Shown here: positions 7,459 to 12,399 of the stretch, piece by piece
Layout: every line of letters begins with the position of its first letter
Numbering within the stretch: the stretch's first letter is position 1
Source of the DNA: Camelus dromedarius
Taxonomy: Eukaryota
Direction of reading: 5' to 3'
Assembly (NCBI RefSeq): GCF_036321535.1
Contig: NC_087447.1
Span: 558,001-622,000, forward strand
Length of the DNA: 64,000 nucleotides
Notes under the pieces: model-generated
Told to the model about the DNA's origin: nothing
The model's database searches: none
What the model saw: only the letters and a program-made list of their open reading frames with translations
Translations under genes and position numbers: made by a program

Positions 7459-10400
7459 CTAGGCCTGGGCAGGCTCTGGGGATTGCAACGCTGAAGGGCC
7501 AGGTGGACCAAGGTCCCCGGGGGCCAGGCTTGTGCGCTGGATGCCCTCCTGGTACTTGCGGCGGCCAAGCTCCAAAATGGCCTGCACCTCTTCTGCCACG
7601 TCCTGCCGGTCACTCTGCTCCAGGGCCTGCACTAGGAGCCCCACAGCTCCTGGCCGCCCAGCCTGGCGCTCAGCCCAGGAGAAGAGCATATGGCGGATCT
7701 GTCCATCCAGGTCGTCCCTGGGGGGATGGATGATGGGGGGATGATGGGGGTATGGTGAGGGACGGGAGGGACGGGAGAGAGGGGAGGGACGGGAGGGACG
7801 GGAGAGAGGGGAGAGAGGGGAGAGAGGGGAGAGAGGGGAGGGAGGGGCCCGGCCTAGCCCAGCCCAGCCCAGGACCACCCACCACACCCAGGGTGGTGCT
7901 CACCCTCCCCTGATGGGTTCCTCAATCCCTAGGCTAAGGGTGGGCAGACCCTCCCTTCCCTGCCCATTTGCCCTGGCTCCACCTCCTGTGGACGGAACTT
8001 CAGCCAGCCTCAAGCAGGGCCCTCCGGGCTGCCAGGCCCAGGCCTGAGGCTGGCCTGAGACCAGTGGCAGGAGGCTGAAAGGAATTCACCTGAATTCATG
8101 CCTGATGCGCTGCAGCTCACGGTAGGGCATGCCCAGGTGCAGGGCCACGGCTGGCCAGTCGGGGCCCAGGCGCCCAGCCACAGTCAGCAGGTTGCTCTGG
8201 GTCAGGAAGCCAGTCTCAGCGTCGCCCAGGTTCAGAGGTGCCAGGGAGAGGCTAGCCCCGTGCCCTGGCCCCTCAGACCCCCGCAGTCTCTGTGGGGAGG
8301 ATGCAGTGGCAGTGAGCCTTGGCCCCTGCCCCCAGGCTCCATCCCTGTACCCCTGGCGACCCCCTGCCCCTTCACACACTGCCCCCCGCCAGGCCACACC
8401 GGCAGCTTGATGGGCAGAGTGGCCATCCACAGGGTATCCATGCCCTTCTTCTGCCGGGCAGCCTCCGCCTCCTCGGGCACCTCCTCTGGCACCTCTCCCC
8501 GGTAGAAGGACACCTGGGTGGGGGGATGAGGTGGGGTTCAGTGCTCCTGCCTCTGCCCAGGTGGCCCAGGGGGCCCTACCCCATTGGCTCACCTGGCCCC
8601 TCACAGCCTGAGCCTTCCGGTCCAGGGCGGTGGTCACGTACACCTCCTTCACGTTCCTCAGGTGCGAATAGAAGACAAAGCGCAGTCTGCCCTCCACGCA
8701 GTCCGGACGGCCTGGGGGCAGGGGCGGGCTCAGCAGGGACCCAGGGGGCTGACCGCAGGGGCCGTTCTCCAGGGGCAGGGGGCGTACCGGCATCCACGTC
8801 GATGCCTCCCTCAAAGGCAGCGAAGAATTTCTCGCCCTCAAACATATCCACGGTGTCTGAGGGCTCGGGGCCGCGGTACCGCTCCAGCAGCCGCCGCAGG
8901 GTGGCATCCACCTGGGGGGTACCCACTGGCTGGGAGCCCAACACCCTGCGCCCCCACCTGGCCCCTGGACCCCACCTGGCTGGCTTCCTGACAGGCCCTC
9001 CGCGACCTCCGGCCCCCACCCCGCACCTTGTTCCGGGGCAGGCACTGCAGCAGGACCTGCTCGGGGTCCCGGCGTCTCTGCAGCGCGATCAGGTTCACGC
9101 GGTGGAGCCGCAGCCGCTCCCAGGCCTTCCGGGCCAGGCCCCCCACGCAGGTCGCAGTGGTGTACCAGAGCCAGTACCTGGGAAGCTGGGGGGTGAGGCA
9201 GGCAGTGCAGACAGGCGGGTGGGGAGGGACTGAGGAAGCCAGAGGGAGCACTGACCAGGAAAAGCGTGTGACCTGGAAGCGGGCGTACAGGTGAGTGAGC
9301 TCTAGCGCCACCTGAGCCGTGATGTCATCCCAGGCGGCTGCAGGAGGGGCCCTGTACAGCAGGTGCAGGCGGGAGCGGTCCAGACTCAGGCCTGGGGTGG
9401 GAGGGGCCGCAGGCTGAGGCCACCCTGGCAGGGCTCCCCTTCTGAGCATCGCTGCCCGCCCCGGGGCCACAAGTCCAGGGATACATGCCGCTGCCTCTCA
9501 CCTGTGATGCCGGGGGGCAGAGGCAGCTGCACAGTGACCGGCTGGAGGAAGCTTGGGGGACCACTCTGGGTGAGGCACAGCAAGGGGCTCGCGGCTGCCT
9601 CAGGCTCCTCCAGCAGGGCTGGCAGTCCTCTGCTGCCCACGTGCACCACCTGGAGCAGGCAGGCCACCCGAACACTCAGCTCGGTGCTGAGGCACGCCCA
9701 CCACCCTTGGCAGCTGCCCAGCCCATACCTGCATGTGGACATGCCGGGGCTCCTCAGTGGCCCCAGGGGGGAATGTGACCTTGACCCCAGGATGTCCCGA
9801 GGAACACAGCAATGTCCCCTCTGGTGGCACCAGACAGGTGTTGGACACAGGGCGCGAAACCACAAGGAACCACGAAAAGTGGGGTACCTGGCAGCGGGCC
9901 CAGAGCCGCTGGGCGTCGGAGGCAGGGTTAGAGAGAACAGGGTCGGGGCTAGGGTAGAGCTGCTCCCCCTCCCGGACAGGCCTGGACAGCCCTCACCTTG
10001 GGTGCCTCTTCCTCCAGGTGGGTCTCCAGGTCACTCCAGCTGTTGTCACTCAGGGTCCTGACCACCACCTCCCGGCAACGCCGGGCCCGTGGTGGCACAA
10101 ACAGCAGCCACAGGCCCACCTCCTGCCAGGCAAGGGCAGCATGAGCGCTGGGGCCAGACCCGCGCCTTCCTCACCCGCCCCCCGAGCCGCCCTGGCTGTG
10201 CCTGCAAGAAGGCCACCCCGTGGGGCTGCAGCTCCAGGACACCACTGAGCAGAGAGTCATGAGGACCCAAGGGGACGAGGCGGGGCTCCGGCAGCCACAG
10301 TCGGTAGCGGATGGTAACAGGGGTGGCAGTGGCCCCAGCAGGGAACTGCAGGCGGACGCCACAGGCCAGGGTCACAGAGCAGCCTTGAGGGGTCACGGGG

Positions 10401-12345
10401 AAGCTGAGAGGGGACAGAGTGGGTATCAGGTCAGACAGAGAAAGGCGAGTTTGAGAAGGGAGACCCCCGAGGCGTGGACAGGTGCTTCTCCAGCCCCTCC
10501 TCTCCCCCACACCATACCTGTCCACATCTGAGGTCAACAAGAGTCTGGGCATTTCTGGGACCACGGGTGTCCCTGTGGAAAGACAGGCAAGTTGTTAGGA
10601 TGGTGGGGACAGCTGCGTCCTGACTGTGGTCTGCCCCTGCACGCCAATAAGCCTACCTGGGGGGCTGTGGGGGGCCGGGGGGGCCCTGCCCAGGGGGTTT
10701 CCTTGTAGGCGCACAAAGGGGGCGTCCAATAGCTCGGGGGGCACGTCCCGGAGCTGGTTGTCCCTCAGGTCCAGCCGGGTGAGCAGTGGGAGGCGGGCCA
10801 GGCTGGCGGGCACCGAGGCCAGAAGGTTGCTGTGTAGAACAAGGAGCCGCAGGGACCGGAGCCCCGCTGCGGGCAGGCACTGGCTTAGGGCCAGCAGAGG
10901 ACTGCTCAGTGCCATCCCTGGCCTGGAGCACCAGGGCAGGCTGCTCCCACTAGGGCCTCCCAGAGAAGCCCTTTCAGTCTCTGCCCTGTGGCTGGACTAG
11001 AGAGCTCAGGCAGGCCTGTGCAGGGAGCCTCAAAGGCCAGGGAAGTTGGGGGCTGCCAAGGGGGAAAAGGCTCAAAAGTGGGCAAGCCTGTGTGTGCAGG
11101 GCCCCGCAGAGGAGATAGGGGCCACGGCAGAGTGCAGGCCGGGCAGTGGCCGACAGGCGCTCCCCACCAGGCCCAGTGAGCCAAGGCTGCAACTCACCAA
11201 GGGAGGTAGGGAGGCTCTGCAGCTGGTTGGAGGCCAGATTGAGCTCAGCAAGGCTGCTCAGGCCTCCGATCTCAGGGGGCAGAGTGTCCAGAAGGTTCTC
11301 AGAGAGATCAAGGCGCTGCAGGGTGGACAGGGACCACAGTGCTGTGGGCAGTGTTTCCAGGCGGTTGTGGGTGATGGCAAGGAAGGTGAGGGCAGGGAGC
11401 GCCCCCAGGGCCTCGGGCAGCTCTGAGAGGCAGTTATGAGAGAGCAAGAGGGCGCTCAAGCCACACATCTGTGGGACACAGGCTGGCAACGTCTCCAGGC
11501 TGTTGAAGCTCAGATCCAGGTGGGCCAGGTGGGTGAGGCCACTCAGGCTGGCAGGCAGTGTGGTCAGGGAGCCCTGGAGGCAGGCACCCAGAGCATTCCG
11601 GCGTTGCCCACCTGGGATGGGGGAAAGGCAGACATGACCCTCAGAGCCAGAGTCCTAGGTCCCAGCTCAGCCCTGCTAGCCATGGAAATAGGTGCGTGGA
11701 AACAGAGACCTCCACCCCAACCCCACCAGACAAGGATCGACAGAGATACTGGAGAGACAGCAGCAGGTAGAGGAGACAGGGACAGACAACGCAGGATCAT
11801 CTCAGCAGATAGCCCCCATCCAGGAAAAATACCCACGCAGGGGTCTTCTGGGGACCCCACTGGGCAGCTGCAGGGCCCAGGAGTGGGGCTCAGCCAGCTC
11901 CCTCTTGGGGGAAAATGGGATGGGTAGAGCTGTGCAGAGAATAGTGGAGGGGATGGGATCGGGTTTGCCCGTGAGGACCAAGAGGCAGAGGCAGGAGCTA
12001 GAGATGGGGTTGGGACAGGGCTGGGAGGAGGTAGGGCTCACCTTTGAGGACCAGGGAGCGGAGACGTGGCAGGCTCCAGGGCAGCCGGGCCAGGGTGGCC
12101 TCCAGCAGCCAAGGGTCCTCGTGGCTGCTCAGCTGCAGGAACTCCACCTCCAGCAGCTGAGGGACCTGCTGGGCACACAGGTGCAGCAGCCGGTGGCAGC
12201 CCCTGGGGTACAGGTCCAGGCTCAGCCGGTTCCCAGCCAGGAGAGGGGGCACCCCCAGCCCTGCATCCACAGCATCTGCAGCATCTCTTGCAGCATCTTC
12301 TACAGCAGCTGACTCGGTCTCCAGCCCCTCCGCCACTGCAGCCAT
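7459..12345 (-). CDS. PIDD1: p53-induced death domain protein 1 (LRR-ZU5-ZU5-UPA-DD), 913 aa, 15 coding exons
   Basis: complement(join(7459..7717,8090..8289,8400..8513,8593..8711,8788..8911,9027..9177,9256..9391,9502..9649,9729..9908,9997..10122,10202..10403,10518..10572,10657..10866,11198..11611,12042..12345)); 2742 nt. Contains LRRs (LAHLDLSFNSLETLP), QVPHFSW and a death domain (LGPDWPAVALHLGMPYRELQRIRHEFRDDLDGQIRHMLFSW). One intron (10123..10201) is GC-AG. Confidence 0.95.
7757..7846. repeat. Polypurine tandem repeat (GAGGGACGG / GAGAGAGGG units) in PIDD1 last intron
   Basis: GAGGGACGGGAGGGACGGGAGAGAGGGGAGGGACGGGAGGGACGGGAGAGAGGGGAGAGAGGGG... seen directly. Confidence 0.9.
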
Positions 12346-12370
12346 CACCCACCAGTCGTCCTCGGGGGCC

Positions 12371-12399
12371 AGACATGTCCCAGCTTGCCAGGCAGGCCT
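12371..12399. promoter_or_regulatory. PIDD1: p53 response element upstream of PIDD1 ATG
   Basis: Perfect half-site AGACATGTCC (RRRCWWGYYY) at 12371-12380 and AGGCAGGCCT at 12390-12399, 26 nt upstream of the ATG. PIDD1 is an established p53 target. Confidence 0.85.

What the first reader, a model, noticed from the sequence alone, without database searches (positions are those of the whole stretch)
9256..9266. PIDD1 second autoproteolysis motif is RFSW instead of HFSW
Seen: site 1 is intact (QVPHFSW, 9870-9881), but site 2 reads FQVT-R(CGC)-FSW, i.e. R589-F590-S591. Established: human PIDD1 self-cleaves at F445/S446 and F587/S588 in HFSW motifs by a Nup98-like His/Ser mechanism. The second cut generates PIDD-CC, which assembles the RAIDD/caspase-2 PIDDosome, while PIDD-C signals to NF-kB. 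Inference: His to Arg could reduce PIDD-CC and bias this PIDD1 toward survival signalling and away from centrosome/ploidy surveillance, even though the death domain (YRE..R) is intact.
Basis: partly seen in the sequence, partly recalled or inferred. Interest (0 to 1): 0.75.

Follow-up and report, generated by a model that had tools for sequence, protein, structure and literature searches.

The report
Camel PIDD1 cleavage site: arginine variant
The camel cell-fate protein PIDD1 has arginine instead of the usual histidine next to its second self-cutting site, and this change is shared by camels, pigs, cattle, deer, hippos and whales rather than being a camel oddity, so it gives a natural test of whether that histidine is needed.

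Summary
On the minus strand, CGC-TTT-TCC-TG (9266-9256) encodes R589-F590-S591-W592 of PIDD1. Site 1 (HFSW, 9881-9870) is intact. The window's product matches Camelus dromedarius PIDD1 isoform X2 exactly.

It is not an assembly slip. 31-mers spanning the base occur in 20 runs from 8 studies, and four camelid annotations carry R.

It is also not specific to this genome. R occupies this position in camelids, pigs, hippo, most ruminants and most cetaceans. All 71 other mammals that carry the site have H, as do 119 of 120 ray-finned fishes.

The stem change was CAC to CGC. Later changes gave H in muntjacs and dolphins, Q in one dolphin and N in water buffalo. All five changes fall within the 12.6% of the mammal tree that is Artiodactyla. 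Of 280 columns invariant elsewhere, only this one changes four times there. F, S, W and the flanks stay frozen.

So one residue lost its constraint in one mammalian order. Its effect on cutting is untested. Nup98 and CARD8/NLRP1 tolerate a non-His residue here, whereas the natural RLS motif of ADGRB3 does not cut. My best guess is that cutting is retained but weaker.

The parts
7462..12345 (-). PIDD1 coding region (ATG at 12345, stop ending at 7462), 15 coding exons, 913-aa product
   Evidence: Exact residue-to-DNA matching of P0252 (C. dromedarius PIDD1 isoform X2) to the window, 891 of 891 residues outside the masked places 7584-7647. Pfam hits: LRR_8, ZU5, Peptidase_S68, Death.
9729..9908 (-). 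Exon carrying autoprocessing site 1
   Evidence: Splice signals read (ag at 9910-9909, gt at 9728-9727). Pfam Peptidase_S68 matches residues 424-456.
9870..9881 (-). Site 1 motif H447-F448-S449-W450 (CAC TTT TCG TGG), canonical
   Evidence: The -2 residue is H in all 122 mammalian site-1 motifs scanned.
9256..9391 (-). Exon carrying autoprocessing site 2 (last strand of the second ZU5 domain)
   Evidence: Acceptor ag at 9393-9392 and donor gt at 9255-9254. Residues 548-592 of P0252.
9256..9266 (-). Site 2 motif R589 (CGC 9266-9264), F590 (TTT), S591 (TCC), first two bases of W592
   Evidence: The 31-mers spanning base 9265 are held by 20 runs from 8 studies.
9178..9255 (-). 78-nt intron directly after site 2. 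It is in frame and has no stop. If retained, it inserts 26 residues between W592 and Y593.
   Evidence: The retained form is annotated as isoform X1 (P0174) and is identical to the window's read-through peptide.
9024..9177 (-). Exon encoding the start of the PIDD-CC fragment / UPA region (YWLWYTT...)
   Evidence: It aligns with the ankyrin ZU5-UPA junction.

Best explanation
This is the dromedary PIDD1 gene. At its second ZU5-type self-cleavage site, the histidine two residues before the nucleophilic serine is an arginine. The change is a CAC-to-CGC transition fixed in the common ancestor of Artiodactyla (inferred by parsimony). Since then that single residue has lost its constraint in this order: R in most lineages, back to H in muntjacs and dolphins, Q in one dolphin, N in water buffalo. 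Meanwhile F590, S591, W592 and both flanking strands stay invariant, and the protein as a whole evolves at a normal rate. How it probably works (inferred, not shown): the F590-S591 bond sits in a kink between the last two strands of the second ZU5 sandwich, as in CARD8/NLRP1 and GAIN domains. S591 still attacks the F590 carbonyl in an N-to-O acyl shift driven by backbone strain. Without the imidazole base the step must rely on water, another residue, or Arg polarising the carbonyl. I therefore expect site 2 still to cut in camels and other artiodactyls, but more slowly or less completely than an HFSW site. That would lower or retune the PIDD-CC to PIDD-C ratio rather than abolish PIDD-CC.
For: Sequence and identity. 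Real base. Distribution: R in 27 of 37 artiodactyl species, H in 8, Q in 1, N in 1; H in all 71 other mammals that carry the site. Codons: rhino CAC; camel, pig, cattle and beluga CGC; muntjac CAC; Pacific white-sided dolphin CAG; buffalo AAC. On a 109-species tree Artiodactyla is one clade holding 12.6% of the branch length and all 5 state changes (P about 3e-5). Setting aside the stem change that prompted the finding, 4 of 4 later changes fall in the crown (P about 2e-4). Of 280 columns invariant outside Artiodactyla, 267 show 0 changes, 11 show 1, one shows 2, and only column 589 shows 4 inside it. F590, S591 and W592 never change. The gene is not accelerated overall: root-to-tip 0.178 against 0.11-0.23 in other orders. 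Model of residues 440-790: the ZU5 part has pLDDT 80-93, with strands at 582-589 and 592-597 and a break at F590-S591. The model matches ankyrin ZU5 (Z 17.9), UNC5B, CARD8 and NLRP1 FIIND, and the cleaved NLRP1 chain ends at 1212, aligned to model residue 151 = F590. Tolerance of non-His at -2: Nup98 H862A/Q, the CARD8/NLRP1 SF/S motif, and CARD8 S295A cause only slight loss (PMC3210808). Fish site 1 is Q in 91, H in 22 and E in 4 sequences. Cost of Arg at -2: ADGRB3 with RLS is uncut, R855H gives 6.5% cutting and R855H/L821F 24.5% (PMC13062082). CL1 H836S impairs cutting (PMC3321182).
Against: No experiment on any artiodactyl PIDD1 was found, so 'weaker but retained' is an interpolation between conflicting analogies. 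A review states that the -2 His is essential in PIDD1 (PMC9162469). If so, cutting could be lost. Conversely, persistence of Arg in about 27 sampled species, at a CpG that mutates easily to His, could mean Arg works fully. Half of the later changes (R to H, twice) are CpG transitions, which inflates the apparent rate. Invariance of S591 cannot be separated from fold constraints, since nearly all neighbouring residues are invariant too. The UPA half of the model is unreliable (pLDDT under 50), and no coordinates were available to measure the Arg-Ser geometry.
Confidence: 0.5

Rival explanations
1. Neutral replacement. The -2 side chain only needs to be polar, Arg does the job as well as His, and site 2 of artiodactyl PIDD1 cuts normally. 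The conservation of His elsewhere reflects something other than cutting efficiency.
For: Nup98 H862A/Q and CARD8 S295A barely affect cutting, and CARD8/NLRP1 use Ser at -2. Fish site 1 is Q, H or E. Hagfish and Lampris carry S at site 2. R, H, Q and N all occur in healthy artiodactyl lineages. PIDD1 is not accelerated overall. No compensating column flips together with 589.
Against: If any polar residue would do, His would not be invariant in 71 other mammals and 119 of 120 fishes. In GAIN domains Arg at this position goes with no cutting, and His restores some.
Confidence: 0.3
2. Dead site. Arg abolishes site-2 cutting, so artiodactyls with R make PIDD-C but little or no PIDD-CC, and FSW is kept only because it is part of the ZU5 fold. 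The caspase-2 PIDDosome would then be weak or differently wired in this order.
For: A review calls the His essential. ADGRB3 with RLS is uncut. Constraint was lost at exactly this residue and nowhere else. Non-cleaving ankyrin ZU5 domains keep the same fold with V-S-A at the aligned positions.
Against: S591 is invariant in all 37 artiodactyls, and the death domain and UPA region remain conserved. Mice unable to cut site 2 show hyperpolyploid liver and heart (bioRxiv 10.1101/2025.06.23.660994), so a 60-million-year loss across a whole order would be a large change with no reported sign. Non-His sites cut in the homologous FIIND.
Confidence: 0.12
3. Assembly error or a private variant of the sequenced animal.
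For: None beyond the prior possibility. A read pile-up could not be made.
Against: The exact 31-mers occur in 20 runs from 8 studies and two organisms. R is present in four camelid annotations and about 27 artiodactyl species, and CGC was read directly in pig, cattle and beluga genomic DNA.
Confidence: 0.01

Closest known systems
Human/mouse PIDD1 site 2 (HFSW; S588 in human, S593 in mouse), MEROPS S68 / Pfam PF10461
   Same: It is the orthologous gene, with the same LRR-ZU5-ZU5-UPA-death-domain layout. It has the same F-S-W and identical flanking strands, and the same exon structure.
   Different: The -2 residue is Arg, not His. This is true of most Artiodactyla, not of any other mammal sampled.
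CARD8 / NLRP1 FIIND (ZU5-UPA) autoprocessing, SF/S motif
   Same: It is a homologous ZU5 sandwich (Z 9.2 and 7.7 to the model). The cut falls at the same structural position: NLRP1 ends at F1212, aligned with F590. A non-His residue sits at -2.
   Different: FIIND uses Ser at -2 and depends on a distal His and Glu (CARD8 H270 and E279). Whether PIDD1's second ZU5 has such helpers was not established here.
Nup98 HF/S autoproteolysis
   Same: It has the same tripeptide logic and an N-to-O acyl shift, and H862A/Q mutants still cut.
   Different: The fold is different (only Z 4.6 to the model). No natural Arg variant was examined.
ADGRB3 (BAI3) GAIN domain with natural RLS instead of HLS/T
   Same: It is a natural Arg at the base position of an H-X-S/T self-cleavage motif, in a beta-sandwich that resembles the model (4dlo_B, Z 9.1), with the scissile bond in a kink between the last two strands.
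   Different: It is not a sequence relative. It is extracellular and disulphide-braced. ADGRB3 is uncut in HEK293 cells and also lacks the aromatic partner of the His.
Ankyrin ZU5N-ZU5C-UPA supramodule
   Same: It is the best sequence and structure match to PIDD1 residues 320-680 (E 8e-15; Z 17.9).
   Different: It does not self-cleave. V-S-A stands where PIDD1 has R-F-S.

Membership tests
PIDD1 orthologue | Product identical or near-identical to annotated PIDD1 | tested here: met
   891 of 891 residues outside the masked places match C. dromedarius PIDD1 isoform X2, P0252. C. ferus and C. bactrianus each differ at 2 residues.
PIDD1 orthologue | LRR, two ZU5, UPA and death-domain architecture | tested here: met
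   Pfam LRR_8, ZU5 (2 stretches), Peptidase_S68 and Death (weak because the query was cut at residue 840). Ankyrin ZU5-ZU5-UPA alignments. ZU5 fold of the model.
S68-type HFS autoprocessing site (site 2) | His at position -2 of the nucleophile | tested here: not met
   Arg (CGC, 9266-9264).
S68-type HFS autoprocessing site (site 2) | Phe at -1, Ser nucleophile, Trp at +2 | tested here: met
   TTT TCC TG+G. These residues are invariant in all 108 mammals that carry the site.
S68-type HFS autoprocessing site (site 2) | Scissile bond at the end of a ZU5 sandwich, in a kink before the last strand | tested here: met
   In the model, DSSP gives strands at 582-589 and 592-597 with a break at 590-591 and pLDDT 83-89. 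The cleaved NLRP1 ZU5 chain ends aligned with F590.
S68-type HFS autoprocessing site (site 2) | Match to Pfam PF10461 at site 2 | tested here: inconclusive
   PF10461 matched only site 1, residues 424-456. I did not test whether the model matches HFSW-type site 2 of other species.
S68-type HFS autoprocessing site (site 2) | Demonstrated self-cleavage giving PIDD-CC | not testable with these tools
   This needs protein expression and blotting. No paper on an artiodactyl PIDD1 was found.
FIIND-type SF/S site (CARD8/NLRP1) | Distal His and Glu that support cutting when -2 is not His | not tested
   H556, E577 and H580 lie upstream in the same domain and are conserved. Their equivalence to CARD8 H270 and E279 could not be checked without coordinates.

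The most novel reading that the evidence does not exclude
A whole mammalian order (camels, pigs, cattle, deer, hippos, whales) runs its PIDD1 with a weakened or histidine-independent PIDD-CC-generating site. Close relatives form a natural allelic series: Bos R versus Bubalus N; beluga R versus orca H versus Pacific white-sided dolphin Q; red deer R versus muntjac H. If R lowers PIDD-CC output, caspase-2/p53 control of ploidy after cytokinesis failure in liver and heart would be set differently in these animals. A smaller side possibility is that R-x-S creates a basophilic-kinase site on the nucleophile itself, making cutting switchable.
Probability: 0.3. Interest if true: 0.75.

Novelty: new variant of a known kind. 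Interest (0 to 1): 0.5.

Why it matters
PIDD1 self-cutting decides between NF-kB signalling (PIDD-C) and caspase-2 activation (PIDD-CC). Recent mouse work shows that the amounts of each fragment matter for liver and heart ploidy. The field treats HFS as the invariant catalytic motif, and one preprint states that the processing sites are very well conserved among mammals.

Here the motif is not conserved in one large order that includes the main livestock species. The -2 residue there behaves as if freed from selection, while everything around it stays fixed. That turns an unsettled mechanistic question, whether the -2 His is a true catalytic base in ZU5-type autoprocessing, into a simple experiment. 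Nature has already supplied the R, H, Q and N variants on almost identical backgrounds.

It also cautions against carrying PIDDosome results from mouse and human over to pig or cattle models (for example pig heart regeneration studies) without checking the fragment pattern.

Tried and rejected
There is therefore no read pile-up, no allele frequency and no splice-junction evidence. I replaced it with a k-mer presence test on 9235-9295.

Tinel 2007 (PMC1782377) and Rosenblum and Blobel 1999 (PMC18040), the primary mutagenesis papers, are not held. What they showed is quoted second-hand from PMC3210808.

Searches for PIDD with H444 or H586 mutants, PIDD-CC with porcine, PIDD1 with cetacean, and PIDD/RAIDD/caspase-2 with porcine found nothing relevant. 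One search was badly framed and returned noise.

I looked for a compensating substitution. Six other columns separate R-type artiodactyls from outgroups (12, 61, 300, 502, 730, 885), but none flips back in muntjacs or dolphins. No co-evolving partner can be named.

The look-up of encoding contigs had no record for the shorter isoforms of Tursiops, Bos mutus and Bubalus X2. The dolphin His codon was therefore not read directly.

The Arg seen at fish site 1 in Albula glossodonta is a gene-model artefact, because the upstream sequence is unrelated. Nyctereutes 'lacking' the site is an isoform that skips the exon.

The UPA half of the AlphaFold model is too poor to use.

The assembly-error and private-variant readings were rejected.

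Full report
THE OBSERVATION. On the minus strand the window reads GTC ACA CGC TTT TCC TG followed by gtcagt. CGC occupies 9266-9264, TTT 9263-9261 and TCC 9260-9258. TG at 9257-9256 is completed to Trp by the G at 9177, after a 78-nt intron. Site 1 is CAC TTT TCG TGG at 9881-9870.

WHAT THE GENE IS. Stop-free segments on the minus strand between about 12400 and 7460 spell a PIDD1 protein. A representative search with the site-2 and following exons, read through the in-frame intron, returned full-length PIDD1 proteins. Exact matching shows that the window encodes a 913-aa product identical to Camelus dromedarius PIDD1 isoform X2 (P0252) at all 891 residues outside a masked stretch. C. ferus and C. 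bactrianus each differ at two residues. Pfam finds LRR, ZU5 (two stretches), Peptidase_S68 (at site 1, residues 424-456) and the start of a death domain. Residues 320-680 align with the ZU5-ZU5-UPA module of ankyrins (E 8e-15).

IT IS NOT AN ARTEFACT. Window and camel-protein references were kept outside them, and they were masked before local BLAST and exact matching against the window. Local alignments and trees did use full-length database proteins. As a substitute I asked which runs hold the 61 bases 9235-9295, where every 31-mer spans base 9265. Twenty runs from eight studies, covering two coded organisms and RNA libraries, hold all sampled words (only three words, so this shows presence and gives no frequency). 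Protein models from three camel species and alpaca all read TRFSW.

WHO ELSE HAS IT. Two searches of the large protein collection, plus cluster listings, gave site-2 motifs for 109 mammal species.
- Arg is found in Camelus (3 species), Vicugna, Sus, Phacochoerus, Hippopotamus, Bos (2), Ovis, Oryx, Moschus, Cervus (2), Dama, Odocoileus and Rangifer.
- Arg is also found in five baleen whales, Kogia, Physeter, Mesoplodon, Monodon, Delphinapterus and Phocoena.
- His is found in two Muntiacus species (three assemblies) and six delphinids.
- Gln is found in Sagmatias obliquidens, in both the RefSeq models and an independent transcript contig.
- Asn is found in Bubalus bubalis.
- All 71 non-artiodactyl mammals that carry the site have His.
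- Site 1 has His in all 122 mammalian motifs scanned.

CODONS. Genomic DNA reads CAC in white rhinoceros. It reads CGC in camel, pig, cattle and beluga, CAC in Reeves' muntjac, CAG in the Sagmatias transcript and AAC in buffalo. The stem change is therefore one A-to-G transition that created a CpG. The two returns to His are the easy CpG transition. Gln needs one further transversion, and Asn needs two steps from CGC.

A CLADE-SPECIFIC LOSS OF CONSTRAINT. On a FastTree tree of the 109 proteins, Artiodactyla is a single clade holding 12.6% of total branch length. All five amino-acid changes at this column lie within it, stem included.
- At equal rates per unit branch length, the chance of all five falling there is about 3e-5.
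- Leaving out the stem change that drew attention to the site, the chance of four out of four later changes falling in the crown is about 2e-4.
- CpG mutability accounts for two of those four, so the true excess is smaller, but Gln and Asn are not CpG events.

A scan of all 893 well-filled columns makes the same point without a model. Of these, 280 are invariant in the 72 outgroup species. Among those 280, 267 are also invariant in Artiodactyla, 11 change once, one changes twice (H617 to Y) and only column 589 changes four times. F590, S591, W592 and the YWLWY strand never change, and the apparent outgroup exceptions come from one exon-skipping isoform. PIDD1 as a whole is not accelerated in the order: mean root-to-tip 0.178, against 0.11-0.23 in five other groups. 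No other column switches together with 589.

OUTSIDE MAMMALS. In 120 ray-finned-fish PIDD1 proteins, site 2 is His in 119 and Ser in one (Lampris). Site 1 is Gln in 91, His in 22 and Glu in 4, and the single Arg is a gene-model artefact. All cyprinids sampled and the gar have Gln at site 1. Hagfish has Ser at site 2. The -2 histidine is therefore dispensable at some PIDD1 sites in some lineages. At site 2 specifically, however, it is among the most conserved residues in vertebrates, which makes the artiodactyl pattern stand out.

STRUCTURE. An AlphaFold model of residues 440-790 is confident for the second ZU5 domain (pLDDT 80-93) and poor for the UPA part. DSSP places strands at 582-589 and 592-597, with a two-residue break exactly at F590-S591. 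The scissile bond thus sits in a kink, as described for GAIN domains. The model matches ankyrin ZU5B (Z 17.9), UNC5B ZU5 (9.9), CARD8 (9.2) and NLRP1 FIIND (7.7 and 7.6). It also matches several GAIN domains, including BAI3 (9.1), and more weakly Nup98 (4.6). The cleaved NLRP1 ZU5 chain, which ends at F1212, aligns up to model residue 151 = F590. Site 2 is therefore structurally equivalent to the FIIND cut site.

WHAT IS KNOWN ABOUT THE -2 RESIDUE. The evidence points both ways.
- For tolerance: D'Osualdo et al. report that Nup98 H862Q and H862A only slightly affect cutting. They also report that CARD8 and NLRP1 have Ser at -2, that CARD8 S295A loses little activity, and that a distal His270 and Glu279 matter instead (PMC3210808).
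- For a cost: a PIDD1 review calls the -2 His essential (PMC9162469). In latrophilin, H836S impairs cutting, and BAI3, whose base position is Arg, is uncut in insect and HEK293 cells although BAI proteins appear cut in brain (PMC3321182). In ADGRB3 the RLS wild type shows no cutting, R855H gives 6.5% and R855H/L821F gives 24.5% (PMC13062082).
- I found no test of H444 or H586 in PIDD1, and no blot of an artiodactyl PIDD1.
- In mice, blocking site 2 (S593A) phenocopies Pidd1 loss for liver and heart ploidy, and fragment stoichiometry matters (bioRxiv 10.1101/2025.06.23.660994).

READING. Three things are shown. The Arg is real. It is ancestral to and widespread in Artiodactyla. The position lost its constraint there and only there. 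The functional consequence is inferred. I put about 0.5 on retained but slower or less complete site-2 cutting, about 0.3 on full neutrality, and about 0.12 on a dead site kept for fold reasons. It is plausible but unproven, and it would apply to the whole order rather than to this genome.

NOVELTY AND SCORE. The sequences are public and annotated. I found no paper noting the RFSW state or the lineage pattern. It is a new variant of a known autoprocessing motif, of moderate interest (0.5). It is not a new system, but it is a clean and cheaply testable natural experiment on a mechanism the field takes for granted.

Noticed in passing
window 9178-9255 (minus strand): The 78-nt intron directly after site 2 is in frame and free of stops. 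Its retention is annotated as isoform X1 in dromedary (P0174, identical to the window's read-through), Bactrian camel, alpaca, hippo, sperm whale, beluga, grey and right whales, pig, reindeer and slow loris. It inserts about 26 residues between W592 and Y593, at the new N-terminus of PIDD-CC. RNA runs hold 31-mers from a stretch that crosses this exon-intron border.
   Followed up: partly
window 9729-9908 (minus strand): A predicted dromedary isoform X3 (P0279, 879 aa; likewise alpaca X4) skips the exon that carries site 1 and also retains the 78-nt intron. It lacks the Pfam Peptidase_S68 hit.
   Followed up: partly
window 12041-12376 (minus strand, other frame): An alternative-frame ORF starts at an ATG 31 nt upstream of the PIDD1 ATG and overlaps the first coding exon. 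Its position matches that described for altPIDD1, reported as conserved in placental mammals (bioRxiv 10.1101/2024.06.27.601030). I did not compare the sequence with the human protein.
   Followed up: no
window 9102-9104 (H617 of PIDD1): This is the only other column invariant in 72 outgroup mammals that changes more than once in Artiodactyla. It is H to Y in Bos (2 species), Bubalus and Phocoena, 26 residues after site 2.
   Followed up: no
loci L007 (Bubalus), L002 (Sagmatias-type transcript), L001 (Muntiacus): Close relatives carry different residues at the same position: Bos CGC (R) versus Bubalus AAC (N); beluga CGC (R) versus delphinids H versus Sagmatias CAG (Q); Cervus R versus Muntiacus CAC (H). 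These are ready-made comparison pairs.
   Followed up: yes
fish PIDD1 proteins P0306-P0424: At site 1 most ray-finned fishes, including all cyprinids sampled and the gar, have QFSW. Chanos and Alosa have EFSW, and some percomorphs and Scleropages have HFSW. Site 2 is HFSW in 119 of 120.
   Followed up: partly
window 7757-7847: A purine-rich tandem repeat (9-nt unit GGGAGAGAG on the plus strand, about 9 copies; also scored as a 27-nt period) lies in the last PIDD1 intron.
   Followed up: no
protein cluster of P0081: A sheep gene model (P0194, 1217 aa) fuses PIDD1 with the neighbouring mitochondrial glutamate carrier SLC25A22. This pulls SLC25A22 proteins of many mammals into the same 90% cluster as ruminant PIDD1. 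It is a database artefact to keep in mind when counting cluster members.
   Followed up: no
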